64,000 nucleotides of DNA from Ascoidea asiatica JCM 7603 (taxonomy: Eukaryota > Fungi > Ascomycota): contig BCKQ01000014.1 in the NCBI GenBank assembly GCA_001600695.1, positions 46,611-110,610 of the forward strand, written 5' to 3'. The position numbers and the translations under genes were made by a program. Within the stretch, counting starts at the first letter, position 1. Each line of letters starts with the position of its first letter. Positions 1 to 55,046 of the stretch are shown here, piece after piece. The notes under the pieces were generated by a model. That model saw only the letters and a program-made list of their open reading frames with translations, was not told the origin of the DNA and searched no databases.

Positions 1-3000
1 GATCGACTTCACACAAATCCTTAATTGATTTGATGGTTTTGATCTGAGTTTCAGTTTTATTAAGTTCATCAATTTCCATTAATGTCTCATTTGCTTTTTC
101 ATCAACCAAATCAGTCCTTCTTGATAGTAAATCAGGAAGCACATTTTGTTTTCCATGCTTATATTGAATATCACAATCATAATGTTCAATGATTTCAATG
201 AATTTCCTAACTCTTTTTCCAGGATCTGATTTAGTTCTAATATATTGAAGAGATTCATGATCGGTTCTAACAATAATTTTGCATCCTTCAATATATTTTT
301 GAAAATGAATCAATGAATGAACAGCAGCTTAAAGTTCTCTCTCTTGAGCAGAATACTTTTGTTGTGTTTTTGGAAATTTTCTTGATTCAAAAGCAACAGG
401 ATATAATTGGATCTTTCCAGTGTTCTCATTTTTATAGGGTTGGAGTAATACACAACTTAAAGCAAAGTCAGAAGCATCAGTTTCTAAAATTGGAACTCTC
501 TCAGGATCAAATGCTTTTAAAACAGGAGCAGTAGTTAATGTTTTTTTCATTGATGTAAAGCATTCGATTTGTGAAGGTTTTAATTCAATTTTTCTTCCTG
601 GTTTAAGAGAGCCAGCCAATAAATCTGTAAGTGGGATCATTTGTTGAGAAAAATTTGAGATAAAGTTTCGGTAATATGAGCATAAGTTAATGAAACCTCT
701 TATATCAGTAATTGATTTTGGTAATGGCCATTTTAAGATTTTCTCGATCTTTCTAGGATCAGTTTTGATTCCTTCTGAGGAAACAATATGTCCTAAAAAT
801 TTGACTTCTTTGCAAAAGAATTTTGACTTCTTCACATTTAATTGAAGTTTTTCTTTTCGAAGTTGAGTAAGGACCTCATTCACTTGATCAATATGATCTG
901 CATTAGTATGGCTGTAGATAATTATATCATCATCATAAACCATAACATAAGGTAGGTGGCCTAGAATTTTCATCATAAATTATTGAAAGGTATAAGTACC
1001 ATTGACTAAGCCAAAAGGCATGACATTGAATTGATAATGACCTGAACTGGAAGAAAAAGCAGTTTTAGCTTTACTATCATTATCTAAAGCAATTTGGTAA
1101 AAGCCATTTTTCATATCCAAACAAGTGAAGCATTTACCACCATTGAGTTTATTTAGGCAAATATCAATAGATGGCAAAGGAAAATAATGCCTAAAACTAA
1201 TAGCATTTAATTTCCTATAATCAACGCAAACTCTATAAGTTCTATCATCTTTTGGAACAAGAACTAATGGAAAGTTCCAACCAATTTTAGTTTCAGAAAT
1301 TAATCCAGCTTCTAGATTTGAGTTAACAAATTCATCAATGAATTTTTGTTGAAGAGGACTATAGTTGCAACTTCCAATATAAATTGGTGTTTCAGAAGTT
1401 GTTTCAATAGTGTGTTTAAACAGTCTTTCTGGAGGTAATCTTGGAGTTGAATCATTCAAGTAAGAGTATTTCTTAAGATCAAACACGTGTTCCTCATTTG
1501 ACTGTGATGTTGAGACATAAAATTTTTCTAATTCATCAACATTTTCTGGACTCAAAATACACTTTTTATCTTGGTTAAAAAGCATAATTGAAAATCTAAC
1601 ACTACCTTTTGGACAAAATTTATGGTCGTAGAGAACTCTACTTCCAATAGTAATATCGAAAGCTTTTGTTGAACTTTCTGGCAAAACAGCACATTTAATC
1701 TCAATTAAACCAAAGTTTTCAATGAATAGTGGTAAAATGACATCATTCTTGACTATCATTGTCCCTGTAAGGCCATGGATTGTTGTAGGCTTACGCTGTA
1801 GCATTTTGATTTCCAAGCCTTTTAAGGATGATTCAAAAACATAGTTGGATTCAGCACCAGTATCGAAAAGAATTTTCATCTTTTTATCATTAACAGAAGA
1901 ATTGAAATATCTATTAGGAAACTTTTTGTTGTTGGTGTTAATTAATCTAAAATGTTCATCGTCAGAAAATGATTCTGAGGTCAGTTCCAGCTCTGACTTT
2001 TCAGATTGGTCTTCCTCCACTCCTTCTTCAGAAATTCTGTAACTAGACTTCTTGTCATATTTGTTTTTGTATCTAGAATTGGAATCACCTTTTGATTTAC
2101 TTTTTGCAGCTCCGGTTTCAGCAATTTTTTTGTATTTTCTATACCAGAAACAAGTATTTCTGAAATGTCCTGGGAGATGACAGAAATCACAAGTTTTGGT
2201 TGTGGAACGAATTGCATTGAAGTTTTCCTTTGAGTTTGAATCAATAATTGATTCAAGATTATTGAACTTATAAATATCATTGTCAATAATAACTTCATTT
2301 GAAACAGCTGTAAAAACATCTGTTGAAGTGAACAAGTTAAGTAATTTGTTGAACAATTCAATAGTTGTTTTGGATGGGAATTTTGTTTCCCATTGAATTT
2401 GATGAGGAAATTCATTTTTAATTCAAGAAATAATTGTTGATCTCATGAAAGTACTAGAAACAGCATTTAAAGGAAGACTTTCATAAAAATGTCTAAATCT
2501 TGTAATATAATCAACAAATTTTTCATTTTCAGAGGGTTTAATTTCTTTGAATTGTTGAATTAAAGCTCTATAATTTCGATCTGTGTCTATATCTCCGAGA
2601 ATGAAAGCACTGGAAGCAGGCTATGAAGGGTTTTTTAAACCATTTCTTGCAATGGTTCTAATGAAATTAATCCATTCTAAATTCATAGATTCTGGAATAT
2701 AGTTATAAAGATTTATACCCCATAAATCATATCTTAACCTATTCATTTTGAAGTAAGTCTCAATAGATTGTAATTTTAGAATTAATTTTCTACCTTGTCT
2801 ACCTTCAATAATTAAATTTTGTTTTAATTTTGGTGGATTTGAAGTACCATCCATACCAATACCAGTAGTATCTCTGTTTATTGCCATACCTGGCCAAAGT
2901 AAAACACTTTCAACCTTCGGATTCTCCCAAGCAGCAGACTCGATCTTTATTTCATCAGATTTAATTTGATTGAGATCATATCTCCAGTTATTTACCTCAT

Positions 3001-14815: not shown

Positions 14816-15316
14816 TTATTTTCTTTCAATACAGTCAATACAGAAATTATGAAAGCAGGAAACACAAAAACTATCACACCATTGAAAAAAAGGTCTAACT
14901 AAATCTTCTTTATCAATATCATCAGTTAATTCAAATAAATTCTCAGTTTCACATCGACAACATCTCCATATAACATTACCATCTCTAATTAATTTTTTAG
15001 TTTTGGAACGAGTAGCTGGATATTCTTCTCTTGAAGGATATTTATCTTTTTTCTTTTCAGCTGATTTTGTAGTTGCTTTCATTCTATAAAGTTTTCCATC
15101 AATCATTGTTAATTTTCCATCATATTTTTCAGTAGTTTTTTCTAAAGCTTCCTGTTGTTTTGAAGAATCAGCAGAATCTAAAGAATTTGAATTTGAACTA
15201 TTTGTTATTGTACTCATTGCTGCATTAGAACTTGAATTATTACTATTATTACTATCTACTAAACTTCTCCTACTGCTTGATTTTTTGCTATTAACCCTTA
15301 TATTTAGTAAACCCAT
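14816..15316 (-). CDS. orphan protein, Ser-rich N-terminus with C-terminal Cys/His zinc-ribbon-like motif
   Basis: 166-aa ORF with native codon usage; WRCCRC...WCDSFCVSCFHNFCIDC. Confidence 0.7.
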   Translation of the reverse strand: MGLLNIRVNSKKSSSRRSLVDSNNSNNSSSNAAMSTITNSSNSNSLDSADSSKQQEALEKTTEKYDGKLTMIDGKLYRMKATTKSAEKKKDKYPSREEYPATRSKTKKLIRDGNVIWRCCRCETENLFELTDDIDKEDLVRPFFQWCDSFCVSCFHNFCIDCIERK

Positions 15317-19168: not shown

Positions 19169-19546
19169 ATGAGAATATCAACTCGACATTTTAAAACAAT
19201 ATTTTCAATTATAATTTTTGGATTAATTAAATTATATATATATTATCTTTACCATACAATAGCAAAGAATAATTTTAGGAACTTCTTATCCTCTTTTCAA
19301 ATGATTTCTTTTTTAAAATCGTCAAAAATAATTATAGATATTGATGAAGATGAATCAATTACTTTTAATGAACAATACTATACTTGTACTTTATTATCAA
19401 TGGGATTTAGGAAATATTCACTTTTTTGTGATGAAATTGATGTGCAACAATGTTTAGAATCTGTTTTTTGTAATGATTATGGCCAAATAGCTATTAAAAA
19501 TAATACTCCAATTGATTCATGTTTTACTCTTTGTCAATGTTCATAA
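19169..19546 (+). CDS. small secreted/type-II-anchored Cys-rich protein A
   Basis: Basic N-terminus, hydrophobic segment (IFSIIIFGLIKLYIYYLY), C-terminal C-x7-C-x5-C-x16-C-x3-C-x-C; TATA-like ATATAAAA near 18934. Confidence 0.6.
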   Translation: MRISTRHFKTIFSIIIFGLIKLYIYYLYHTIAKNNFRNFLSSFQMISFLKSSKIIIDIDEDESITFNEQYYTCTLLSMGFRKYSLFCDEIDVQQCLESVFCNDYGQIAIKNNTPIDSCFTLCQCS

Positions 19547-21740
19547 TTGTATTGTATGAAATACTTTAGTTTCTCAAATTCATATATATTTTTTATTAAT
19601 TTTTTAGGGGAGGTTTTATGGGGTATTTTTATGGGATATTTAGGGATTCATTTAGGAATTTTTTTCTTCAATTTTTTTTCAGTACCAATGCATATTTCAC
19701 GATATATAATCTTTATATTTTATCTGAAATAAATATCATTATTATTATTATCATTACTATTATTATTATTATTATTTGTATATTTGAGGATTTTTGAAAG
19801 TGAATTGAAAAAGGCCCTTTTTATTTGCTAAAACCTATGAAGGAAAAAAAGTATCTGTTAGTACTGAATTTATTCATTTTCTTTTATTACTTAAGCCTAT
19901 AATAAAAAGGTTAAAATCTGAATTTTTTTAACTAAAGCTCAATAAAAGATTCATACAAGAAAAAATAACTCAGAAGAAAAAAAGAAAAGAGGAAAAGACT
20001 TTACTATTTTAGAGAATTAAACAAAATTTTGGAGCTATCATTTATGCTATAGTTAATGAATAACAACTGAGCCAATTTTAATGTGTTTGTAGAGTTCAAC
20101 TAGAAAATTTACATTCAATATGGTGTATAAAATAATGCATTCACTTTTTTCTGACTGAGAAAAGAACTCGGGTTTTCTTGAAGAGTATAATATAATACTC
20201 CGATTATCTTCTCTGCTTTTTTTTTGAGTTTTTAAGAAAATATTATCGTTTAAGATTTTTAAATAGCAGTTTAAAATTCCTGCTAGGAGACAAATAAGAT
20301 TTGTATTGATGGAAACTTAATTATTAAATTTATATCCATAAAAGAAAATCAAGCAATATGGCTGAATTCGTTCCCTTATTGTTAAATAAAGATTGGTTAA
20401 TTTACCAGAATTTGTTATAGATTTTATTTGGTATTTCGACTATAAGACAACTTGGATATTATATCGCACTTAATTAAGGAAATTTGCTGTATTTGGGAAT
20501 TGATTCTGAAAATTATTAACGACCTAATATAACTTAGCAAAGTAAGGATACTCCATAGATCTAAGAATGAAAGTTTCTATAACTTTTTTTTTATCATTAA
20601 TTTATCGATGTAGCTAAAATATTGGAATTCATATTTATCTATTGTTTTAATTTAAATATTTTATATTCAACTAATCCATAAAGCATTTTAAATTCTTCCA
20701 AGTTTGAATTGATTTACTAAATATTTTAAGGTTTTTCGTAAATAATAAAATATTCCTTTTTTAACAGGTCTAGATGTTTTATAAAAAAAGCATATGCATC
20801 CCTTGCCGAAAAAATGCTTTAAACTTTTTTATCCTGATAAAAGGAGTGTAAAAAAAAATAAATAGTGTATTGTGGCTGGTTAAGGTTAAGATTCTATTTA
20901 AGTACAAACTGTATCTCAATGCATCCTTATTTAGTCAGCTATAAAGCATAATTAACTTTATTGCGGCTTTCTAATTCGGCTAAAAGCATTAGGTGTCAAA
21001 AAAATGTTTATACCTACATATGTTTTTTAATTTCCATATTTGGTTATTTCCGAGGGTTTTTTTCCGGTATTTTTGGTAAATAGATATCCGGCCGGTTTGC
21101 TTCCGGCCCACTGTGGTATTGAAGCTGATATAAACATAAAGTGCCTGACTATAATTGTCTAGCCATGACCTGGTCCTGTTTAATGCAAAAACCTTGAATA
21201 AAAAGGAATATTTTTAAAAGCAAACCATGACGTCGTTAAAAAAAAACATAATATAATAAATTCCTTATTTGAATTCAAATATGGCAAGAAGCAAACAATG
21301 GCTTTCAATCTCGGATACTGTATAAAAACCAGAATTTCAAAAAAAAAACGTCAAGAAAGCTAAGAAATTGTAAGAGAGATTTTATGCTTCTTATCTATTT
21401 TTGAAAGAAGAAGAACTTTTTATTTTTGATGCCTTTGTGATATTGGTATAGTGATATATTCAATTTGAATTCTTTTCAGAATCTTTCTAGTAGATTATTT
21501 TTTTTCAGATTTTTTTTTTTATCAGTTTTCAAGAAAATTCCTATCTCTACTGAGTAAATGAAGATTGATATTGAAAAAAAAAATGTGTTGAAACTTACCA
21601 GAAGGATTACATCTATAGGCGTTATAAAAAGAAAGATCGATCTTAATTTGATGAAAGGTTTTTATTAATCGAAAAAATAATTGAGAAATACTTATCCCTT
21701 TTTGTTATGTCTTCTAAACATAAAAAACAGTTAAATGTAG

Positions 21741-21935
21741 AAAATAAAATAAAATAAAATAAAAGAAAAGAAAAGAAAAGAAAATAAAAGAAAGTAGAAA
21801 AAAAGTGAAGAAAAAAGAAGAAAAAAAAGAAGAAAAAAGAAAAAAGAAGCAAAATGCGTCAAAAGAAAATAAAAAAACAATAAAAAGAAAATAAAAAGAG
21901 AATAAAAAGAGAATAAAAAGAGAATAAAAAAGAAT
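21741..21935. repeat. purine-rich low-complexity tract ((AAAAT)n, (AAAAG)n, repeated AAAAGAGAATA)
   Basis: Direct reading; source of the poly-Phe ORFs on the minus strand. Confidence 0.8.
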
Positions 21936-22216
21936 GGGTTACCATAAAAAGAATAAAGTCGAGTTGAAATGTAAAGGAACCTCAAATAAAACTTTTTTTT
22001 TTCAAGACGATATAATGATAAATATGATTTTCTAAAACTATAATATATGAGATTGTATATGGTATTTTTTTGAAAAAAGTTTTAAATATTACAGATGTAA
22101 AACATGTAAAACCAAGTAAGCAAAAATAAAATGAAGTAAAAATGAGAAAATTTTATTCAAAAAGAATATTATTGAAAATAAAAGTATATGGTAATGCATT
22201 GTGATCTTGAAAGAGT

Positions 22217-22858
22217 TCAATCAAATAAGTACACCTTAGGGCAAATACAATGACCAGAACAATAAACGATAAGATTTCTCCTAAAGCCACTTAAATGAAT
22301 AGGAGTTAACTCACAGTCAGTATCACATCTTACATAAGAATAACATCTTGAATCATCACATTCAATATTGGAGCAGTAAAATTTTCTTCTTCTTGGTGGA
22401 TTTGTTTCTTGAACAGTTTTTTCATTTGATGTTAATGTAGCTGATATGCTTGATTCAAAAGTGGATTCATTTTCAGCCTTATTTTCTTTCATTTTTTCAT
22501 ATTCAAACATATCACTTATCAGATATTCTTTAAATTGAGGAAATATTGAATCCTGTGTTTTATTATTTGAAGCTATATTTGAATTAGTATACTTTACATC
22601 ATCATATTGGCTAATTTCTGAAGACTTTTTAAACTTTTGAATTGAACTATTATTAAATGATTTTTGAATAAATGAAGAAAAATCTTTTAGAGATTTGATT
22701 ATACTATAATTTGTTATATTAGTATCCGAATTATAATCATTTTGAGAAACATTTGTAATTTTATTGTATGTTATTGTTGAAAACAACAATAAAGAGAAAA
22801 AAGTTGCCAAAAATTGAAAAAAAAATATTCTATTCCTAGTTTTATTTTTATTAACCAT
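22217..22858 (-). CDS. secreted Cys-rich precursor B (prepro-peptide architecture)
   Basis: Signal/anchor IFFFQFLATFFSLLLFSTI, pro-region with six N-glycosylation sequons (NVS, NIT, NYS, NNS, NKT, NES), RRRK, then an 8-Cys domain ending C-x3-C-x-C. Confidence 0.75.
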   Translation of the reverse strand: MVNKNKTRNRIFFFQFLATFFSLLLFSTITYNKITNVSQNDYNSDTNITNYSIIKSLKDFSSFIQKSFNNSSIQKFKKSSEISQYDDVKYTNSNIASNNKTQDSIFPQFKEYLISDMFEYEKMKENKAENESTFESSISATLTSNEKTVQETNPPRRRKFYCSNIECDDSRCYSYVRCDTDCELTPIHLSGFRRNLIVYCSGHCICPKVYLFD

Positions 22859-44818: not shown

Positions 44819-45847
44819 ATGAAGTTTCAATTAAGCAAGGCTCTTGCCTTTGCTTCCTCTTGTCTTTTAGCATCAGCTGCTGTATTAGACAAACGTGCAA
44901 CATATCCAAATCCAGGTACTCTTAGCGGTGTTGCAACTGCTGGTATTCATGATCCATCAATGATTTATTATAATAAATATTATTATGTTTTCAACTCCCA
45001 TGATGGTTTATGGTCTGCAAGATCATCAAGTCTTAGTGGAAAATGGACCAAATTTGGTCAAGTTTTATCTTCTGGTTCAAGTTCAATTGATAATTCTGGT
45101 TCTGATGATCCATGGGCTCCAGATGTACATTTAGTTGGAAGTACATTTTATTGTTTTTATGCTGTTTCAACTTTTGGAACTTTAGATTCCTCAATTGGTT
45201 ATGCAACTTCAAGTGATTTAAAAACTTGGAAAGATAAAGGTGCTGTTTTAACATCAAGTTCAAGTGCATCTGGTGTTTTATCTTCAACAAATGCAATTGA
45301 TCCAAATTTATTGGTTGTTGGTAGTACTTATTATTTACAATGGGGTTCATTCTGGTCTGATATTTATCAACTTAAATTAAGTTCTTCTATGAAAGCTACA
45401 ACTTCTGCAATTTCTGCAGCTAAACAACTTTCTTTAGATACTGCAAGTACTCATTCAGAAGAAGGTTCTTATATTCACAAAGGTACCAGTGGTTATTATT
45501 ACTTATTGGTTTCAAAGGGTCAATGTTGTGACTACGAAAGTTCTAAACCAGCTTCCGGTGGTGAATATAAAGTTATTTATGGTAGATCAAAAAGTCCAAC
45601 TGGTCCATTCCTTGATAAAAGTGGAACTGATATGGTTAATGGTGGTGGTACTACTCTTATGGCTTCTCATGATGATGTCTATGGTCCAGGTGGAGGAGGT
45701 GTTTTCTACGATTCTGTATCTGGAAAAGATGTTCTTTACTATCATTATATTGATACAACTGTTTCTTATAATGATGGTTACAAAAAATTAGGTTATAATT
45801 ATATCACTTATTCTAGTGGATGGATGGTTCTTTCTCAAACCGCATAA
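44819..45847 (+). CDS. secreted GH43 endo-1,5-alpha-L-arabinanase-like glycosidase
   Basis: Signal peptide plus KR pro-site; GIHDPS (base), WAPDV, NAIDP (modulator), WGSFWSDIYQ, EEGSY (acid), GQCC, GRSKSPTGPFLDKSG, YGPGG, LYYHY. Confidence 0.9.
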   Translation: MKFQLSKALAFASSCLLASAAVLDKRATYPNPGTLSGVATAGIHDPSMIYYNKYYYVFNSHDGLWSARSSSLSGKWTKFGQVLSSGSSSIDNSGSDDPWAPDVHLVGSTFYCFYAVSTFGTLDSSIGYATSSDLKTWKDKGAVLTSSSSASGVLSSTNAIDPNLLVVGSTYYLQWGSFWSDIYQLKLSSSMKATTSAISAAKQLSLDTASTHSEEGSYIHKGTSGYYYLLVSKGQCCDYESSKPASGGEYKVIYGRSKSPTGPFLDKSGTDMVNGGGTTLMASHDDVYGPGGGGVFYDSVSGKDVLYYHYIDTTVSYNDGYKKLGYNYITYSSGWMVLSQTA

Positions 45848-46187: not shown

Positions 46188-47915
46188 CTATTTATTGAGG
46201 AGAAAAATTTTCCCTTCATATGCTCTCAAGGTATCACCATCATCAGCATCATCATAATTTGATAAGATAAGAGAAAAATTTCCTTTCAAATGTTTTTTAA
46301 ATGAAAGTGATTTTTCACTAAAATTTAAAGCAACATATGCTTGAGATTTTTCAGTTTCCTTTGAAAAAATAAATAAATCATCATCACTTGAATCATATAA
46401 TTCAAAATTTGATCCATAAACTAAAATATCTTTATATTCCTTTCTAGTTTTTAATGCTTTTTTCCAAAATGATAATAAAGAATTTGGATCATCTATTTGA
46501 GATTCAACATTAATATCCTTATAATTTTCATTAACATCAATCCAGGTTTTATTACCAGTTGTAAAACCAGCATGAGGATCATTTGACCATTGAACTGGAG
46601 TTCTTGCATGATCTCTTGAAAGTAAATGAACACCATCTTTAAATTTTTTCATTTTTTCAGCATCTCCAGTTTTTTTAATAATATTATAATTATTTATAAC
46701 ATCAACATCTTTGAATCTATCAATGGTCCAATTTTTTGTATTTGTCATACCAATTTCTTGACCTTGATAAACAAATAAAGTTCCAGTTAAAGAAATTTCC
46801 ATTAAAGATAATAATTTTCCAGAAATTGTACGATATTTAGGATCATCATTACCAAATCTAGTAATACTTCTTGGTTGATCATGATTTTCAAGATATATTG
46901 TAGACCAAGCATCAGTTCCTTCAATATAATCAAAACTTGCTATTATTCCTTTTTTCCATTCTTCTAAAGTAAAAGGAGCTAAAAAATATCTAAATTCAGG
47001 TGTTGCACCAAGACTAGTATGTTTAAAATTAAATAATTCATCAATTTCTTTATTTGAAGCTTTAGTATAATCTAATAAAGTTTTATGATCACCTTCACCA
47101 ACTTCACCAACAGTCATACAATCATATTTTGCAAAAGTTTCTTTATGCATTTCTTTAATAAATTCATGAATTCTAGGACCATTAAGTGTACATGGATTTG
47201 GATGTTGAAAAGGTTGAGAAGGATCAGAAATTGGAGCATCAGGTAAACCAGGAACTTTTGAATATAAACCAGCAGTATCAATTCGAAAACCATCACAACC
47301 TTTATCTAACCAAAAAGTTATAGCATTTGAATAAATTTCTTTTCTTGTTTCATCATTTTCCCAATTTAAATCAGGTTGTTCAATTGCAAATAAATGTAAA
47401 TAATATTCTTGAGTTAATTCATCCCATTCCCAAGCAGAACCACCAAAATGAGATTTCCAATTATTTGGAGGAATTCTATTACCATCTTTATCAAATTTTG
47501 CAGGTCTCCAAAAATACCAATCTCTTTTAGGATTTGATTTTGATTTTCTTGATTCTTTAAACCATTCATGTTGATCAGAAGTATGATTAATAACTAAATC
47601 AAGAATAATTTTCATACCTCTTTGATGAATTCCATCAATTAAATCACCCATATTTTTTAATGTACCATAAGGAGGATAAATATCTTGATAATTTGATATA
47701 TCATAACCCATATCAATTTGTGGACTTGCGTACATTGGCGATAACCAAATAATATCAACACCAAGATCTTTAATATAATCTAATTTTGAAATAATTCCAG
47801 GTAAATCACCTAAACCATCACCATTTGAATCTTTGAATGAAGATGGATAAATTTGATAGATTGAAGCTTCTTTCCACCATTTATGTTCAAATTTTGTAAC
47901 TTTTGTTTTAGTCAT
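46188..47915 (-). CDS. GH13 alpha-glucosidase (maltase type)
   Basis: WWKEASIYQIYP, DLVINHTS, GFRIDTAGLYSK (T-A-G signature of maltases), TVGEV, YLENHDQPR. Confidence 0.96.
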   Translation of the reverse strand: MTKTKVTKFEHKWWKEASIYQIYPSSFKDSNGDGLGDLPGIISKLDYIKDLGVDIIWLSPMYASPQIDMGYDISNYQDIYPPYGTLKNMGDLIDGIHQRGMKIILDLVINHTSDQHEWFKESRKSKSNPKRDWYFWRPAKFDKDGNRIPPNNWKSHFGGSAWEWDELTQEYYLHLFAIEQPDLNWENDETRKEIYSNAITFWLDKGCDGFRIDTAGLYSKVPGLPDAPISDPSQPFQHPNPCTLNGPRIHEFIKEMHKETFAKYDCMTVGEVGEGDHKTLLDYTKASNKEIDELFNFKHTSLGATPEFRYFLAPFTLEEWKKGIIASFDYIEGTDAWSTIYLENHDQPRSITRFGNDDPKYRTISGKLLSLMEISLTGTLFVYQGQEIGMTNTKNWTIDRFKDVDVINNYNIIKKTGDAEKMKKFKDGVHLLSRDHARTPVQWSNDPHAGFTTGNKTWIDVNENYKDINVESQIDDPNSLLSFWKKALKTRKEYKDILVYGSNFELYDSSDDDLFIFSKETEKSQAYVALNFSEKSLSFKKHLKGNFSLILSNYDDADDGDTLRAYEGKIFLLNK

Positions 47916-49931
47916 TTTGATATAAATAAAAAATTGATTTGATTTAAAAAGAGTATATATATTAGAAATTATAAATTAATGTAAGAATTGATAAGACTTA
48001 TAAATTAATTAAATGTTAAAATTTTTAGATTTTGGAAAGAAAAATTGAAAGCTTTTGAAGAAAATCGGAATAGGTTTTATACTATTTTTTCTTCAAATTT
48101 CAGATATATAATATAATAAATAATGTTTGATTGAAATGAAGTGAATATGTTTTAATTACTTTTTTCTGGATATTCTATTATAATTTTAAAAAATATTTGG
48201 TAAATGTGAAAAACAGGGGGAAAATACTTGTAAAGAAGAAACGACTTACTTGTATACTAATAGGCTAAATAAACTTGAAAGTATAATGTTATCAGTATTT
48301 TTAGAGGTATTTTAGTAATTGTGTTTTCTTTGAAGCAATCTTTTCAATAAAAAGTATTCTTTTGGTATTGAAGTTTAAGCTATGGTCTTGAACTTATATT
48401 AGCTAAAAATTATTTATCAATGATGCTGACAGAGTCGATTGAATTTCAGCTCAGAATTTAAAACACATCGTGGGCTATCGGCTCATGGAGAAGAACAGTG
48501 ACTTTATTTATTCGAAAAGCCGAACCCAAAAATTTATATGTGTAACTTTGCTTGGATCTTACACGTACTCTTAAAGTAGAATTGTGGGGAGCTTTTTCTC
48601 CACAAGATACAAAACAAGATATAATTGCACTTTATTTCAACTGTATTTGTAAAGCTTAATCGATTTCCCCCTTCAGACATATTTCTAAAATGTTTCTTGA
48701 TTTATGTTTGATCAAGATTTCAAGTGGTGTTCTGAACTAAAATTTCAATTAACCATTGAATATCAACTATTATGCTACAATCTTTATCTTCTATTTGTGA
48801 CTTCCCTTGATATTGCATGTACATTTGCATAAGCCATGAGTGTAATGAGAGTCAGTATTTCCAAAATGCAAATAGCCAGCAACAGTACAAGAACAAGCAA
48901 ATTGGGGCAAGAAGAGCAGAAAATCGGATTATTTCGCTGACTCCACAAAAAGAGATTTATCCGCATCGGGGCTTTCTTCAAAAAAGGGTTTTTAGCAGGG
49001 GCTGAACCTTACCAATAAGAGCGGGCAAGGGGTAGGAAGCTTTGCGGGGTGCATATGGCTGGGCATGATTTGAGAGTACACCCATCGAGGCTTTCCGTAA
49101 GCAAAGCTTATTTGAGTTTATTCCCTGGTGAGAGATCCGATGCAATAATAGAAAAGTTTCCGATCAATTTCCAAATGAAGTTTCAAATGATACTCAAACT
49201 AAGTCTAACTCATATCCAAGTGGGTCCGGAATAAGTTCGAGATTATTTCTGGAAGTAGAATATATTATTCAGTGAGTAAATATAGCCCAAATTTACTATT
49301 CACTACATAGAATAAGATTTGGAAATACCCTACTACTTAATGACGTCTCTGGAGTTAAATTAATATTTGGCAAATTCTCTTCGATATAAACAGACCAAGT
49401 TTTTTTTTTCAAATACCTTGATAAAAATAACATCTTTAACTATGCTTACGAGTTATTTTTTGAAAGTCATTTCTTTTAAGATTGCTTTTACATAAAATCT
49501 TAAATGATATGCATATTTTGCTTAAGGAATATTTCAATGATGAATCCACATTTACGTTCACCATACTTTAAAACTTTAATTTAATTTTCAGCGTAATTGA
49601 TATATTTCCTTAATTTATAGCAAAGATACGTCAGTGAAATTTAAATGAAAAATTAACTGAATAAATGAACATTTTCTTTTGCTGTTGCTGTTGCTTTTGC
49701 ATATTTTTTAAAAATGGTTAAAATTTTGATTGAAAATTTCTTTCTTGGTTCATTGATAAGTAATATTTTGTAAAAAAAAAGTATTTAAAATAAACATTTT
49801 CCTTTTCTTTTTTCCTTTTTCTTTTTTATTCATTTCTTTGATTATTCCTCTACTATAACTTTCAAAATTTATTATATTATTCAACCCAATATTCTCTTAT
49901 ATTATTATTATTTATTTATTTCTAATTTACA
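47916..49931. promoter_or_regulatory. bidirectional maltase/permease promoter with Mig1-type sites
   Basis: Divergent gene pair as in MAL loci; ATTGTGGGG (48581-89) and TTTGCGGGG (49041-49). Confidence 0.6.
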
Positions 49932-51683
49932 ATGTCTAATAAATATAATAGTAATGACTTTACTGAAGAACTAAAAAAGGTTCCAAGTAATTCTCATATT
50001 GAGAATATAGATACTAAATCTGATTTAAATTCTAACGATAAGACTGTTGAAACAAATGAATTATTAACAAAATTTCTTGGTTTATCAGAAGATGCAAAAG
50101 ATGCTGATTTGAATGAAAAAACAATGCCTTTAATTGAAGGTTTAAAAACTTATCCAAAAGCTGCTTTATGGTCAGTTGTATTATCATCTGCTTTGATAAT
50201 GGAAGGTTATGATACCGCTTTACTAAGTTCATTATATGCTTTACCTGCTTTTGCAAAAAAATATGGTGAATTAAATAATTCTACTGGAGAATATGAAGTT
50301 TCTGCTGCTTGGCAAACTGGACTTTCAATGTGTACAAATGTTGGTGAAATTCTTGGACTTCAATTTGCTGGTATAATTGCTGATAGAATTGGTTACAGAT
50401 TTACTTTAATTTATTCTTTATTTTTGGTTATTTGCTTTATATTTATTTTATTTTTTGCCCCAAGTTGTGGCGTATTAGCAGCTGGTGAAATTTTATTAGG
50501 TATACCATGGGGTTGTTTTCAAACATTAACAATTTCTTATGCCACTGAAGTTTGTCCATTAGTTTTAAGATTTTATTTAACAACTTATATTAATGTTTGT
50601 TGGGTTTTAGGTCAATTAATAGCTTCTGGAGTTTTAAAAGCTTATTCTGAAAATACAACAGATTTAGCTTATAGAGTTCCTTTTGCAATTCAATGGATTT
50701 GGCCAGTTCCAATAATAATTGGAATTTATTTTGCTCCAGAATCTCCATGGTGGTTAGTTAGAAAAAATAGATTAGAAGATGCTAAAAATTCTTTAAAAAG
50801 ATTAATCACAGTACCAAAGAATAGTTCATTACCATCAAATGTTTTAGCTTCTTTAGTTTCTAGAATGCAAATCACCATTGAAAAAGAAAATATCATCAAT
50901 AGAAATGCCTCATATTTGGAATGTTTTAAAGGAATTGATGCAAGAAGAACTAGAATTGCATCTTTAACTTGGGTTGTTCAAAATGCTTGTGGTAATTCAT
51001 TAATGGGTTATTCAACATATTTTTATGAAAAAGCAGGCCTTAGTGTTAGTTATGCATTTGATTTTACTATTATTCAATATTGTTTAGGTATTGTTGGTAC
51101 ACTTTTATCATGGGTAATGTGTAAAAAACTTGGTAGATTCGAAGTTTATTTCGGAGGTCTTTTTATTCAATGTATATTATTATTGATTATTGGAGCATTA
51201 GGATGTGCATCCGGTTCAGCAGTTTCTTGGGCTATAGGAAGTTTATTATTAGTTTTTGTATTTGTTTATGATGCAGGAGTTGGACCAGTTTGTTATTGCA
51301 TAGTATCTGAACTTCCTTCAACAAAATTAAGAACTAAAACAATTGTATTAGCTAGAAATTTTTATAATATTATGGGAATTGTTAATGCTGTTTGGACACC
51401 ATATATGTTAAATTCAACAGAATGGAATTGGGGAGCTAAAACAGGATTCTTTTGGGCAGGTATTAGTGCTATATTTCTTGTTTGGATGTGGATTGATTTA
51501 CCTGAAACCAAAGGTAGAACTTTTGCTGAACTTGATGAATTATTCAACCAAAAAGTCAAAGCAAGAAAATTCTCAAAAACTGAGGTTGATCCTTATAATT
51601 CTCTTGAAAACAAATTAAATTCCAGTCAAATTGAAGGAATTGTTCATGGTGGGGAGATAATGTCTTCTGAGAAAGAAGTCTAG
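49932..51683 (+). CDS. alpha-glucoside/maltose:H+ symporter (Mal31/Agt1 family)
   Basis: LKTYPKAALWS, LIMEGYDT, GIPWGCFQTL..SYATEVCP, PFAIQWIWP, APESPWWLVR, DLPETKGRTFAELDELF. Confidence 0.96.
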   Translation: MSNKYNSNDFTEELKKVPSNSHIENIDTKSDLNSNDKTVETNELLTKFLGLSEDAKDADLNEKTMPLIEGLKTYPKAALWSVVLSSALIMEGYDTALLSSLYALPAFAKKYGELNNSTGEYEVSAAWQTGLSMCTNVGEILGLQFAGIIADRIGYRFTLIYSLFLVICFIFILFFAPSCGVLAAGEILLGIPWGCFQTLTISYATEVCPLVLRFYLTTYINVCWVLGQLIASGVLKAYSENTTDLAYRVPFAIQWIWPVPIIIGIYFAPESPWWLVRKNRLEDAKNSLKRLITVPKNSSLPSNVLASLVSRMQITIEKENIINRNASYLECFKGIDARRTRIASLTWVVQNACGNSLMGYSTYFYEKAGLSVSYAFDFTIIQYCLGIVGTLLSWVMCKKLGRFEVYFGGLFIQCILLLIIGALGCASGSAVSWAIGSLLLVFVFVYDAGVGPVCYCIVSELPSTKLRTKTIVLARNFYNIMGIVNAVWTPYMLNSTEWNWGAKTGFFWAGISAIFLVWMWIDLPETKGRTFAELDELFNQKVKARKFSKTEVDPYNSLENKLNSSQIEGIVHGGEIMSSEKEV

Positions 51684-52328
51684 AGTTTATATATAGTTTT
51701 TTTTATTTTTTTCTGTTCGTACGATTTATGCCTTTATTTTTATATACAAATTCAACTTATTTTCAATTAAAAACTAGTATTTACTTCAAGCTCATAAAAG
51801 ATCAAAACAATATTCAATCAATAATTGACTTCTAGAATTGACCCTCGAGAAGTCAAAAATTATTATTTCCTGAATTGGCATTATTCAGGTTGGAAGTATT
51901 GCAAGATAGTCGGAACCCCGTAAACGATAAATCTCCTCAAAATATTTGGGTCTTCTTTTTACTTCTACTAAAATCAGCGGGCCAAATGAGTCTCGTGACT
52001 TGTGGCGCATTAAAACATGCAGATGGGAGTTTCGTAACCGAGTTTTCCGTTAATTGTTTTGCCGCTTAACAAAGTACCGATATCGAGGAAACTAACTTTG
52101 CTGGAACTTTTTTATTAAAAGTACCATATTTGTTGATTAAAATAGCATTGAAGTTCATGAAAAAAAATATTAAATTCATTGACATAATTGTGTTTATTCA
52201 ATTGATTTTAAACCATAAAGTACTCCAATTAACAATCATAAAATCCTTTAGCTGGTGAAAAATTCCATAACTTTTGATTTCTCTTTTATTCGTTATCTCT
52301 ACTTTAATTCTCTTAAATCTTTTTTTTA

Positions 52329-55046
52329 ATGGATTCCTCTCTGGCATTTCAATTTGGGTTGGAAAATAGTAATGATTTTCCAAACAATAAAAGACAAAGA
52401 GTTTCAAAAGCTTGTGTTTATTGTAGAAAGAGAAAAATCAAATGTAATGGTTTAACTCCTTGTTTAAATTGCAAAAATCATAATGAACTCTGTGATTATA
52501 CAATTCAAAAATCTAAATCAAAAAAAAATGATTTAAAATCTGATATGGATAATCTAAGATCTGATTTTGAGTCGAAATTTGATAACATTTATAATATTTT
52601 AAATACATTGGTAACTTCCATGGGAAAAACTGATAATCTTTCTAATCAATTTACTTCTCTTAAAAATATTGGCAAAAATGATATCAATAATATCACCAAT
52701 ACTATTAATAATGATATCAATATAGATAATGATAATAATAATAAAAGGAATGGCAACAATAATAGTAATAAAAATGGTAATAACGATTCAAATAGGACTA
52801 ATAATACCAATAATAGTAATCCATCTAGTGTTGATACTTTATCTGATTACTATAATAGTAATGATGACAGTGATATTATTCAGAATAACTCTAGTGTCAC
52901 ACCTTCTCCCTTGGAAACAGATATAGATGGTTACGATCATCATCGTATTAATAAAATTGAAAAAAAAGCCTCTTCTTTTAGAGATTTAACAATGAGTAGA
53001 AAAGCAAGAATGTCAAAAGATCTTTCTTTTCAATGTGAACAATTAAAAAAACATGAATCAAAGTTATGGTTGAAAGCATCAACAATATCAAATCCTGCTA
53101 GGTTTCCAAAAATTGAAATTATTAAATTATTAATTGATATTTCCTCTTTAGCTCATTTCTCCTTTTTTAATGTTTCATCTAATCAAATAACTTCTCTATT
53201 TGAAGATTATTTTATAATTGCAAATAATTATTATCAGTCTGAAAAAAATTCAGAAATTGATATTGAACTGATAGCAAATGCTAAATCTCCAAAATTATCT
53301 TATGGTGATTTTTTGCTTATGAATATCTTTTTAGCTTTCACTGCTTCTATAGCATCTGAATTACTAATTTGTAATTCTAAGAGAAATATACTTCAAAATT
53401 TATTATCTCTTTATAACTTAAATCTTAATTTGAGTGATTTTGAAAAATTAATGGATGATCATTATTGTAATGCAATTTTCTATTTCCATAAAATTTCTTC
53501 AAATGGAGATGGCTTAAAAGCAATTCAAGGTATAATTTTATTATTGTATTATTCTGATACAATTTTATCTGCAGGTGCAAATAACTTATTATTATCAACT
53601 GGTATAAGATTAGCTCAAGCTTTATGTTTACATAGAGAAGACTCTTATTCAAAACTTTCATTCAAAGAAGTTACTTTTAGAAAATATCTTTGGACTAATT
53701 TATATTGTTATGATAATTCAATGAAACTTGCTAAACCTCAAATTATTCATGAAAGTGATGTTAATTCAGTTAATGAAATTTGCTTACAAAATTATGTTAA
53801 AAGTTCTTTGGATCCAATTTTATTTCAACGAAATTATTCTAAAATTCAATTATCTAGAGATAAATTAAGTACTTATGAAAAGATGAAAAATAAAAATGAG
53901 CTTTTAGCACGTAAAAGTCATAGAGGCTTTGAAACAGTTTTAGAATATTATTATGCATTACTTGCTAAAGTAAATTCAAAAGCTTATAGTCAATTATATT
54001 CTGTTAATGCATTTGAAAATAAAACTGATGAAAATATAATGTATTCTATTGAAATGTTAAATAATGAATTAGATGAATGGAATGATAGTTTAATTGATAT
54101 ATTTAATTGTAAAACTGAATTAAATGAAAATATATTAAATGATTATGGTGAACCGAATGATCAATATATATTTAAAGAAAAATATTTTGCAGTTGCTGAA
54201 TTAAAGATAAAATATTATTATAGTAGGATGATTATAAATAGATTCACTCTTAGTTTTTCAATGAAATATAAACAAGGATCTAATATATCTAGTAAATGTG
54301 GAGAAGAAGTTGAAAAATTAGCTGGAATAAGTATCAAAGCGAATCGTGAATTATTAAATTCTCTTTTGATTGTATGTCGAACAGCAGATATACCTAGAGT
54401 AATATTAAATTATTTCTTATTTTATGCTTCTATAGGGTTTGAATCATTATTCAATCATATAGAATATAATCCTAATAGCGAAGATCTTAAAATATTGATA
54501 AGAGTTTCTATAATGTTTTTTGAAATTTATCAAGGAGAATTTTTCAAAAATGATTATATCAAGACAATTACATTATTAATTCGAGAATCAATGAAGTTTA
54601 TAATTTCTAATTACCAAAAGTCACAAAATGACAAAGAAGCAAATGTGATGATAAATCTTTATTTTCACAAAGAAAAAGAATCTAGAGCTTCTTCTCTTTT
54701 TGAAATTGAAACTACCAATACTGATAATATCCCACAAGAAGAGTCCAAAACAAATATTATAACAGATAGCAATAACACTGATTCAAATGGTGGTTCTGTT
54801 ATTCATAAATTTTTAAATAATCAAGTTAAGTTAAAAGATGTAAATCAGGTTCAAATGCCATTAAATGAGTCAAATAATATTAATATTGACGGATATACTA
54901 TGGAAAATCTTGATTTTGGTGATTGGAATAATCCTGATTTTGTAAACTCATTCAGAAGCGATGCATTACTTGAAGAATTCCTTATGAGCCAACCAGGAAT
55001 ATATTTCAATATTAATCAAGACAACTCTTATGACACATTTTCATAA
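52329..55046 (+). CDS. Zn(II)2Cys6 transcription factor with fungal middle-homology region
   Basis: KRQRVSKACVYCRKRKIKCNGLTPCLNCKNHNELC; GIRLAQALCLHR...RKYLWTNLYCYD. Confidence 0.93.
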   Translation: MDSSLAFQFGLENSNDFPNNKRQRVSKACVYCRKRKIKCNGLTPCLNCKNHNELCDYTIQKSKSKKNDLKSDMDNLRSDFESKFDNIYNILNTLVTSMGKTDNLSNQFTSLKNIGKNDINNITNTINNDINIDNDNNNKRNGNNNSNKNGNNDSNRTNNTNNSNPSSVDTLSDYYNSNDDSDIIQNNSSVTPSPLETDIDGYDHHRINKIEKKASSFRDLTMSRKARMSKDLSFQCEQLKKHESKLWLKASTISNPARFPKIEIIKLLIDISSLAHFSFFNVSSNQITSLFEDYFIIANNYYQSEKNSEIDIELIANAKSPKLSYGDFLLMNIFLAFTASIASELLICNSKRNILQNLLSLYNLNLNLSDFEKLMDDHYCNAIFYFHKISSNGDGLKAIQGIILLLYYSDTILSAGANNLLLSTGIRLAQALCLHREDSYSKLSFKEVTFRKYLWTNLYCYDNSMKLAKPQIIHESDVNSVNEICLQNYVKSSLDPILFQRNYSKIQLSRDKLSTYEKMKNKNELLARKSHRGFETVLEYYYALLAKVNSKAYSQLYSVNAFENKTDENIMYSIEMLNNELDEWNDSLIDIFNCKTELNENILNDYGEPNDQYIFKEKYFAVAELKIKYYYSRMIINRFTLSFSMKYKQGSNISSKCGEEVEKLAGISIKANRELLNSLLIVCRTADIPRVILNYFLFYASIGFESLFNHIEYNPNSEDLKILIRVSIMFFEIYQGEFFKNDYIKTITLLIRESMKFIISNYQKSQNDKEANVMINLYFHKEKESRASSLFEIETTNTDNIPQEESKTNIITDSNNTDSNGGSVIHKFLNNQVKLKDVNQVQMPLNESNNINIDGYTMENLDFGDWNNPDFVNSFRSDALLEEFLMSQPGIYFNINQDNSYDTFS

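What the first reader, a model, noticed from the sequence alone, without database searches (positions are those of the whole stretch)
19169..22858. Convergent pair of related orphan Cys-rich secreted precursors: candidate new toxin/defensin-like or signalling-peptide family
Seen: both proteins have a basic N-terminus, one hydrophobic segment, a polar spacer and a C-terminal Cys domain. They share the spacing C-x3-V-x-C ... C-x3-C-x-C (A: CLESVFC...CFTLCQC; B: CYSYVRC...CSGHCIC), and both contain GFR[K/R]. B has six N-glycosylation sequons in the spacer and RRRK directly before an 8-Cys domain of about 55 aa. A has RK before a 6-Cys domain. Known: glycosylated pro-region + Kex2 site + small disulfide-rich peptide is the layout of yeast killer toxins, pheromone precursors and fungal antimicrobial peptides. 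Inference: a duplicated, fast-evolving secreted peptide family (antagonism or self/non-self recognition) in a gene-poor accessory island. The internal RR in B could give a two-chain mature product.
Basis: partly seen in the sequence, partly recalled or inferred. Interest (0 to 1): 0.8.

Follow-up and report, generated by a model that had tools for sequence, protein, structure and literature searches.

The report
Ascoidea-only cysteine-rich membrane protein pair
Two small neighbouring genes of an Ascoidea yeast are real and are kept, side by side, in a second Ascoidea species; each encodes a membrane-anchored or secreted protein ending in a small cysteine-rich domain of an undescribed family, one of which is unusually well conserved, so a fast-evolving toxin is unlikely.

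Summary
Both ORFs exist as described: A is 19169-19546 (+), 125 aa; B is 22217-22858 (-), 213 aa. The genome is very probably Ascoidea asiatica NRRL Y-17576 (20.3 Mb, 71 contigs).

**Real genes.** Each has one syntenic, convergently arranged orthologue in A. rubescens (B' XP_020047165.1, A' XP_020047164.1). All 8 (B) and 6 (A) C-terminal cysteines are kept.

**Conservation.**
- B's last 55 residues are 48/55 identical and the final 23 are invariant. The best 55-residue windows of four neighbouring genes reach 33-42/55.
- In that domain dN is 0.11 and dN/dS about 0.07, with ordinary synonymous divergence.
- B's spacer is almost randomised (dN 0.99). A's domain evolves faster (dN/dS 0.36).

- RRRK is DNRK in A. 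rubescens.
- The sequon excess is not conserved (7 against 1).
- The island is syntenic, not accessory.
- The domains are acidic to neutral.
- Similarity between A and B is only marginal: hhalign P 0.009, 15 of 400 shuffles reach the score, and HMMER sees nothing.

**No relatives or fold.** Nothing turned up in 1.84 billion protein representatives, Pfam, PDB sequences, or metagenome and viral scans. AlphaFold2 gave pLDDT 42.

**Best reading.** These are genus-restricted type II or secretory proteins that display a disulfide-bonded C-terminal binding module. Function is unknown.

The parts
19169..19546 (+). Gene A: single-exon CDS, 125 aa plus stop
   Evidence: ORF list. Orthologue P0002 (A. 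rubescens XP_020047164.1, 172 aa) lies at the syntenic, convergent position. P0002 searched against the whole 20.3-Mb genome finds only this ORF, E 0.0028.
19196..19252 (+). A: N-terminal hydrophobic segment (about residues 10-28), a signal anchor or signal peptide
   Evidence: Best 19-aa Kyte-Doolittle window is 1.74 at residue 10. The orthologue scores 3.08 at residue 12.
19406..19543 (+). A: C-terminal 6-Cys domain (F80-S125), beginning FRKY. Pattern: C-x7-C-x5-C-x16-C-x3-C-x-C
   Evidence: FRKY, CD, D, C, V, C, D, G, N and the last three Cys are all invariant against A. rubescens. dN 0.49, dN/dS 0.36.
22217..22858 (-). Gene B: single-exon CDS, 213 aa plus stop
   Evidence: ORF list. Orthologue P0001 (A. 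rubescens XP_020047165.1, 201 aa) matches at E 3.4e-28 over 99% of the query. It is single copy in its own genome.
22772..22828 (-). B: N-terminal hydrophobic segment (residues 11-29), preceded by four basic residues. Predicted topology is N-in/C-out.
   Evidence: Kyte-Doolittle 2.06 at residue 11; orthologue 2.20 at residue 13. The charge distribution is read from the sequences.
22394..22771 (-). B: variable polar spacer (residues 30-155)
   Evidence: dN 0.99 and dN/dS 0.68 for residues 1-158. There are 7 sequons here against 1 in the orthologue.
22382..22393 (-). RRRK (residues 156-159); only the RK is conserved
   Evidence: The alignment shows RRRK opposite DNRK.
22220..22384 (-). B: conserved 8-Cys C-terminal domain (K159-D213). 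Pattern: C-x4-C-x4-C-x5-C-x3-C-x17-C-x3-C-x-C
   Evidence: 48/55 residues are identical and the last 23 are invariant. Of the 55 codons, 29 are identical, 19 differ synonymously and 7 differ non-synonymously. dN 0.11, dS 1.53. This is the only stretch of the 10-kb region conserved at DNA level.
19547..22216 (.). 2.67-kb spacer between the two 3' ends; no conserved element found
   Evidence: blastn and tblastx against the A. rubescens locus give only low-complexity matches. There is no Rfam match. 20700-21400 is unique in the genome.

Best explanation
A and B are two genuine single-copy, single-exon genes, so far found only in the genus Ascoidea.

**Proposed mechanism (inferred).** Each protein enters the secretory pathway through an N-terminal signal anchor. 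For B the charge distribution clearly favours N-terminus in, C-terminus out; for A the orientation is less certain. A poorly constrained polar stalk carries a compact C-terminal domain into the lumen or to the cell surface. There its cysteines (8 in B, 6 in A) form disulfides.

**What is shown and what is not.** The domain is the functional part, and this is shown by selection. In B it is kept almost unchanged while the stalk is randomised. That pattern fits a binding module that recognises a conserved partner: a receptor, another surface protein or a wall component. It does not fit an arms-race toxin.

The boundary motif RK followed by F or Y is shared by all four proteins. It may be part of the fold, or it may be a site where a basic-residue protease other than Kex2, such as a yapsin-type one, releases the domain. 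Neither release nor the partner is shown.
For: **Real genes.** Orthologues sit in A. rubescens at the same place and in the same convergent orientation, between the prenyltransferase beta/Skp1-like genes and the zinc-ribbon gene.

**Protein-level selection on the domains**
- B domain: 48/55 identical, dN 0.11, dS 1.53, dN/dS 0.07.
- Synonymous differences occur at 19 of 48 identical-residue codons (0.40). Neighbouring genes show 0.40-0.41, so this is neither a recent transfer nor DNA-level constraint.
- The best 55-column identity windows of four neighbouring ortholog pairs are 33-42/55.
- All 6 domain Cys of A are kept despite 30% overall identity.

**Topology.** Each protein has one hydrophobic segment, at residues 10-30. 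In B and B' it is preceded by 3-4 basic residues.

**No described family.** Pfam gives nothing even at E up to 10. PDB sequences give nothing. An exhaustive HMMER search of 1.84 billion representatives returns only P0001.
Against: - No signal-peptide or topology predictor could be run. A's flanking charges are nearly balanced, so its orientation is open.
- No expression or peptide evidence was available. The A. asiatica proteomics paper has no supplementary files held.
- The AlphaFold2 model of B's domain is unusable (pLDDT 41.9), so disulfide bonding and fold are inferred from Cys parity and topology only.
- 8 Cys plus 2 His could equally bind metal if the domain were cytosolic or in the mitochondrial intermembrane space.
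- No partner is identified.
Confidence: 0.55

Rival explanations
1. One reading: both are prepro-precursors. A glycosylated pro-region is removed by Kex2 at a dibasic site, releasing a small disulfide-rich toxin, defensin-like or killer peptide used in antagonism.
For: - The layout is signal, spacer, basic site, Cys domain.
- B's last six Cys follow C-x5-C-x3-C-x17-C-x3-C-x-C, which resembles the CxxxC...CxC signature of cysteine-stabilised alpha-beta defensins and scorpion toxins. That resemblance is recalled from my own knowledge and is a lead, not a test.
- RK is conserved before both domains.
Against: - RRRK is DNRK in A. rubescens, so no KR or RR site is conserved at the junction. From my own knowledge, Kex2 needs Arg at P1, and RK would put Lys there.
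- The sequon excess is not conserved.
- B's domain is under strong purifying selection, unlike typical toxins.
- The domains are acidic to neutral (pI 4.2-6.9).
- No defensin or toxin Pfam family matches even at E 10.
- A lacks the upstream CxxxC.
- No chitin-binding-protein or immunity genes lie nearby, unlike zymocin-type loci.
Confidence: 0.12
2. The Cys/His-rich C-terminal domains bind metal (zinc or copper) on the cytosolic side of a membrane or in the mitochondrial intermembrane space. In this model the proteins are N-terminally anchored, like Sco1, Cox11 or Mia40-type proteins.
For: - B's domain has 8 Cys plus 2 conserved His, including CSGHCIC.
- It contains two Cx3C motifs 17 residues apart, a spacing reminiscent of small Tim proteins (recalled from my own knowledge).
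- The architecture of N-terminal anchor, divergent spacer and highly conserved C-terminal Cys domain recalls yeast Mia40 (own knowledge).
- A's flanking charges do not fix its orientation.
Against: - There is no Pfam hit to zf-Tim10_DDP, CHCH, SCO or any zinc-finger family.
- B's hydrophobic segment starts at residue 11 with 3-4 basic residues before it and about one after it. That favours an ER type II orientation and leaves no room for a matrix-targeting presequence.
- A's domain has no conserved His and only 6 Cys.
Confidence: 0.12
3. A and B are ancient paralogues, one of which gained or lost a disulfide pair, and they act together as a heteromeric pair.
For: - They share the same architecture, the same taxonomic range and adjacent positions in both species.
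- An ungapped block is shared by all four sequences: RK, [FY], x12, C-x3-V-x-C-[DN]. It includes a common D, and is followed by [RK]-x-N and a terminal C-x3-C-x-C.
- hhalign gives P 0.0086.
- B has exactly two more Cys than A.
Against: - hhalign probability is only 4.7%, and 15 of 400 composition-preserving column shuffles do as well.
- BLASTP and HMMER see nothing.
- The whole region is syntenic, so adjacency in both species carries little weight.
- The complex prediction could not be run: the tool was unreachable.
Confidence: 0.3
4. One or both ORFs are chance open frames in AT-rich intergenic DNA.
For: - A is only 125 aa.
- Its ESM Atlas recognition value is low (1677).
- There are no expression data.
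Against: - Both frames are open in two species whose housekeeping proteins are only 43-59% identical.
- Every domain cysteine is conserved.
- dN/dS is below 1.
- The A. rubescens A protein finds only ORF A in the whole genome.
- By my own estimate, stops make up about 9% of codons at 25% GC, so a 213-aa ORF is essentially impossible by chance.
Confidence: 0.03

Closest known systems
Yeast prepro-toxin and pheromone precursors processed by Kex2 (K1/K28, HM-1, alpha-factor type)
   Same: N-terminal hydrophobic signal, polar spacer, basic residues just before a C-terminal product. The product here is small and Cys-rich, as in HM-1.
   Different: No conserved KR or RR site, no conserved glycosylation, no sequence match, no repeats. 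B's domain evolves slowly rather than fast. The hydrophobic segment (19-21 aa) looks more like an anchor than a cleaved signal.
Cysteine-stabilised alpha-beta (CS-alpha-beta) defensins and scorpion-toxin-like peptides, e.g. plectasin and charybdotoxin (pattern recalled from my own knowledge)
   Same: B's last six Cys have the order and roughly the spacing C...CxxxC...C...CxC, and are followed by residues with strong beta-strand propensity.
   Different: No Pfam match. The loop is 17 residues long. There are two extra N-terminal Cys. The charge is acidic to neutral. A lacks the CxxxC. The fold was not predictable (pLDDT 42).
Type II (signal-anchored) Golgi and surface proteins with a stalk and a luminal domain
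   Same: Short basic cytosolic N-terminus, one transmembrane segment, a variable stalk, and a conserved C-terminal luminal domain.
   Different: The 'head' is only 46-55 residues and is built around cysteines. It has no enzymatic family signature.
Zymocin-like killer toxin loci derived from cytoplasmic linear plasmids (PMC11848437)
   Same: AT-rich, lineage-restricted secreted-protein genes in budding yeasts.
   Different: Per that paper, those loci carry chitin-binding-protein and immunity genes and evolve rapidly, and the Ascoideales examples are plasmid-borne. None of this is seen here.

Membership tests
Kex2-processed toxin or pheromone precursor | Conserved dibasic KR or RR site at the pro/mature junction | tested here: not met
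   RRRK in this genome is DNRK in A. rubescens. Only RK followed by F or Y is shared.
Kex2-processed toxin or pheromone precursor | N-glycosylated pro-region | tested here: not met
   There are 7 sequons here (3.5 expected, P 0.037) but 1 in the orthologue (2.4 expected). Glycosylation itself cannot be tested with these tools.
Kex2-processed toxin or pheromone precursor | Cleavable signal peptide | not testable with these tools
   Only hydropathy could be computed. The hydrophobic runs of 19-21 aa favour an uncleaved anchor in three of the four proteins.
CS-alpha-beta defensin or toxin | CxxxC ... CxC cysteine signature | tested here: inconclusive
   Present in B (C178-x3-C182 ... C204-x-C206) and absent in A. 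A pattern match alone does not establish the family.
CS-alpha-beta defensin or toxin | Sequence-profile or fold match | tested here: not met
   No Pfam family at E up to 10 and no PDB sequence match. The AlphaFold2 model is too poor for a fold search.
Small Tim (twin Cx3C) and CHCH intermembrane-space proteins | Pfam zf-Tim10_DDP or CHCH profile match; soluble helix-loop-helix | tested here: not met
   No Pfam hit. An N-terminal membrane segment is present, and the low-confidence model shows strands only.
Zymocin-like killer locus | Toxin gene beside chitin-binding-protein and immunity genes | tested here: not met
   The neighbours are a prenyltransferase beta subunit, a Skp1-like protein, She3, Las1 and a zinc-ribbon protein. 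The criterion comes from PMC11848437.
A and B as one protein family | Statistically significant sequence or profile similarity | tested here: inconclusive
   BLASTP E 1.7. hhalign P 0.0086, probability 4.7%. 15 of 400 shuffles reach the score. HMMER finds no cross-hit. A shared ungapped block RK-x13-C-x3-V-x-C-[DN] is present.

The most novel reading that the evidence does not exclude
B's 55-residue, 8-cysteine domain is a new disulfide-rich fold. In this reading it serves as a genus-specific extracellular signal or recognition ligand: membrane-tethered, or shed at the conserved RK boundary. A would be its diverged paralogue and partner. That would make the pair a previously unseen cell-cell communication or recognition pair in budding yeasts.
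Probability: 0.12. Interest if true: 0.6.

Novelty: new variant of a known kind. Interest (0 to 1): 0.35.

Why it matters
Small lineage-restricted Cys-rich secretory proteins are common in fungi and are usually assumed to evolve fast. B is unusual in combining two properties:
- no detectable relative outside one genus;
- a domain more conserved than the catalytic cores of neighbouring housekeeping genes.

That points to a specific function under strong constraint in Ascoidea, a little-studied filamentous yeast lineage associated with beetles and sap. It also gives a short, well-defined domain for structural and binding studies.

For the scan, the result corrects an attractive but mostly unsupported 'killer-toxin precursor' reading.

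Tried and rejected
**Searches that found nothing**
- Pfam on the full proteins and on the domains alone, up to E 10. The only hits were two chance matches near E 0.05.
- PDB sequence profiles.
- ESM Atlas.
- Metagenome and viral contig scans with the B domain.
- Paralogue searches in the organism's own genome. Only a weak non-domain match for A turned up, at E 0.11.
- Rfam on 15-26 kb.
- Conserved non-coding elements between A and B: only low-complexity matches.
- Shared promoter motifs for Ste12, Ndt80, Mcm1, STRE, Hac1 and others in 800 bp upstream of all four genes.

**Structure and complex prediction**
- AlphaFold2 on the B domain gave pLDDT 41.9. I therefore ran no fold search, because the matches would be meaningless.
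- Complex prediction for the A and B domains was unreachable six times. There is no verdict on binding.

**Other dead ends**
- A zymocin-like origin was rejected after reading PMC11848437.
- Prenylation of A's C-terminus was considered. It ends CQCS here but CSCH in A. rubescens, so the motif is not conserved, and the domain is probably luminal.
- No supplementary proteomics files are held for PMC6041473.
Full report
**Setting**

The window is about 25% G+C. It carries ordinary budding-yeast genes:
- Las1, a KH-domain protein and an alcohol dehydrogenase;
- a prenyltransferase beta subunit, a Skp1-like protein and She3;
- further along, a JmjC/Kelch protein, a Ras-like GTPase, GH43, a MAL-like cluster, Pex13 and Npr3.

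The assembly has 20.3 Mb in 71 contigs. The Ascoidea asiatica NRRL Y-17576 assembly is listed as BCKQ01000001-BCKQ01000071, which is also 71 records (PMC6041473). The only database relatives of the two genes come from Ascoidea rubescens. The genome is therefore very probably A. asiatica. In this lineage CUG is decoded as Ser, or as Ser/Leu. A has no CTG codon. B has one, at codon 113 in the spacer, so the code does not affect the domains.

**The observation**

Both ORFs and the quoted strings are present.
- A (19169-19546, +) has a hydrophobic segment at about residues 10-28. It has RK at 81-82 and six Cys after it (87, 95, 101, 118, 122, 124), plus C73 before it.
- B (22217-22858, -) has four basic residues in its first ten and a hydrophobic segment at 11-29. 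A polar spacer follows, then RRRK at 156-159 and eight Cys between 162 and 206. The protein ends at residue 213.
- GFRK in A and GFRR in B are both present but not at equivalent positions. One lies before the first domain Cys; the other lies inside the long loop.
- B's spacer has 7 sequons against 3.5 expected from its own composition (P 0.037).

**Are they genes?**

Yes. A word-indexed search of 5.8 billion proteins with B found one relative: A. rubescens ASCRUDRAFT_150948 (P0001, XP_020047165.1, 201 aa, E 3.4e-28, 99% coverage).

Its locus (L004) is syntenic. In order it carries the Skp1-like gene, the prenyltransferase beta gene, the B orthologue, and a convergent 172-aa gene (P0002, XP_020047164.1). 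Further on lies the orthologue of the zinc-ribbon protein at 14816-15316.

The 172-aa protein is the A orthologue.
- It shares FRKY, CD, D, C, V, C, D, G, N and the terminal C-x3-C-x-C, that is, all six domain cysteines.
- Searched against the whole 20.3-Mb genome, it finds only ORF A (E 0.0028).
- A's C73 is not conserved.

All four genes are single open frames. The two A. rubescens genes were called as single-exon models.

**Selection**

The two species are far apart. Identities are 43% for the Skp1-like protein, 52% for prenyltransferase beta and 59% for the zinc-ribbon protein.

Against that background, B's last 55 residues stand out.
- They are 48/55 identical and the final 23 are invariant.
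- The best 55-column windows of four neighbouring pairs reach 33-42/55.
- In these 55 codons, 29 are identical, 19 differ synonymously and 7 differ non-synonymously.
- The fraction of identical-residue codons that differ synonymously is 0.40. Neighbouring genes show 0.40-0.41.

The conservation therefore reflects selection on the protein. It does not reflect a recent transfer or an overlapping DNA element.

Nei-Gojobori estimates (dS is saturated at about 1.4-1.5):

| Region | dN | dN/dS |
|---|---|---|
| B domain | 0.11 | 0.07 |
| Rest of B | 0.99 | 0.68 |
| A domain | 0.49 | 0.36 |
| Prenyltransferase beta | - | 0.23 |
| Zinc-ribbon protein | - | 0.17 |

B is thus a nearly free-floating stalk carrying a tightly constrained head. 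A's head keeps its cysteine scaffold but changes its surface.

**What fails in the precursor model**

- The RRRK before B's domain is DNRK in A. rubescens. The only basic feature common to all four proteins is RK followed by F or Y. From my own knowledge, Kex2 wants Arg at P1, so RK is not a canonical site. Yapsin-type aspartic proteases, which act at basic residues and can substitute for Kex2 processing (PMC2515848), remain possible. That is inference.
- The sequon excess is not conserved: 1 sequon in A. rubescens against 2.4 expected.
- The RR inside B's domain is conserved, but it sits in the invariant 23-residue block, so it says nothing about cleavage.
- The domains are acidic to neutral (pI 4.2-6.9), unlike most antimicrobial peptides.
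- The 10-kb gene-poor stretch is equally present and collinear in A. rubescens. It is not an accessory island.
- Apart from the B domain and weakly the A domain, nothing in the stretch is conserved, and nothing matches Rfam.

**Are A and B related?**

This is not established.
- BLASTP gives nothing.
- hhalign of the two ortholog pairs gives a collinear 43-column alignment: score 16, P 0.0086, probability 4.7%.
- 15 of 400 column shuffles of the A alignment, which keep its Cys content, reach the same score.
- HMMER profiles of each domain do not rank the other among 1171 ORF fragments.

In favour, a four-sequence alignment shows an ungapped block: RK-[FY]-x12-C-x3-V-x-C-[DN], with a shared Asp. 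It is followed by [RK]-x-N and the terminal C-x3-C-x-C. B also has exactly two more cysteines than A. I put common ancestry at roughly 40%.

**Relatives and fold**

- An exhaustive HMMER search of 1.84 billion cluster representatives with the B-domain profile returned only P0001.
- A profile of the A pair returned only P0002 in the word-indexed search. A was not searched exhaustively, so its restriction to the genus is less secure.
- Pfam, PDB sequences, the ESM Atlas, and metagenome and viral scans are all blank.
- There are no paralogues in the organism's own genome.
- AlphaFold2 on the two-sequence B-domain alignment gave pLDDT 41.9. I did not run a fold search on it.
- Unannotated yeast assemblies could not be searched with these tools. 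'Ascoidea only' therefore means 'no relative in the protein collections available here'.

**Mechanism**

*Shown.* There are two conserved genes. The constraint is concentrated in the C-terminal Cys domains. All cysteines are invariant. Each protein has one N-terminal hydrophobic segment.

*Inferred.*
- B, with 3-4 basic residues before the segment and about one after, inserts N-in/C-out.
- The stalk and domain are luminal or extracellular.
- The even number of domain cysteines (8 and 6) forms disulfides.
- The near-invariance of B's head argues for recognition of a conserved partner. This is a binding or signalling module, tethered or shed at the RK boundary, rather than a toxin in an arms race.

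*Rivals.*
B's C-x5-C-x3-C-x17-C-x3-C-x-C does resemble the CS-alpha-beta signature, but only as a pattern recalled from memory.
- A metal-binding cytosolic or intermembrane-space domain: about 0.12.
- Chance ORFs: about 0.03.
- A paralogous, cooperating pair is compatible with the main reading: about 0.3.

**Comparison with known systems**

A zymocin-type origin was checked in the literature and rejected. Such loci sit beside chitin-binding-protein and immunity genes and evolve fast (PMC11848437).

The closest functional analogy is a type II stalked protein with a miniature disulfide-rich head. The closest formal analogy is a prepro-peptide. Membership in any named family was either tested and not met, or was inconclusive.

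**Verdict**

This is a real, undescribed, genus-restricted pair of small Cys-rich secretory-pathway proteins. The novelty is moderate (a new family of a familiar kind) and the function is open.

Noticed in passing
whole genome (G000): The assembly has 20.3 Mb in 71 contigs. This matches the 71 records BCKQ01000001-71 of Ascoidea asiatica NRRL Y-17576 listed in PMC6041473. Neither A nor B of this genome is in the 15-billion-protein collection, so this genome's proteins appear to be unannotated there.
   Followed up: partly
window 14816-15316 (-): A 166-aa protein with a C-terminal Cys/His zinc-ribbon-like motif is 59% identical to a 154-aa A. rubescens protein at the syntenic position (L004:16561-17025). 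It is therefore a real conserved gene.
   Followed up: partly
window 329-2356 (-): Two adjacent ORFs carry reverse-transcriptase and RNase H pieces, split by a stop. This looks like a broken retrotransposon at the window's start.
   Followed up: no
window 46188-55046: A MAL-like cluster: a GH13 alpha-glucosidase (46188-47915, -), a sugar transporter (49932-51683, +) and a Zn2Cys6 regulator (52329-55046, +). A GH43 gene lies just upstream (44819-45847).
   Followed up: no
window 21720-21990: A long purine-rich (GAAAA-like) low-complexity tract lies downstream of gene B. A similar tract occurs at L004:14790-14910 in A. rubescens. The similarity is probably compositional only.
   Followed up: no
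window 21060-21180: A short GC-rich patch (CCGGCCGG...CCGGCCC) lies in the otherwise AT-rich spacer between A and B. It is unique in the genome, has no Rfam match, and is not conserved in A. rubescens.
   Followed up: partly
L004:15170-16150: A GC-richer stretch in the A. rubescens locus has several overlapping ORFs on both strands, one of them annotated as a 74-aa gene. No counterpart was detected in the window.
   Followed up: no
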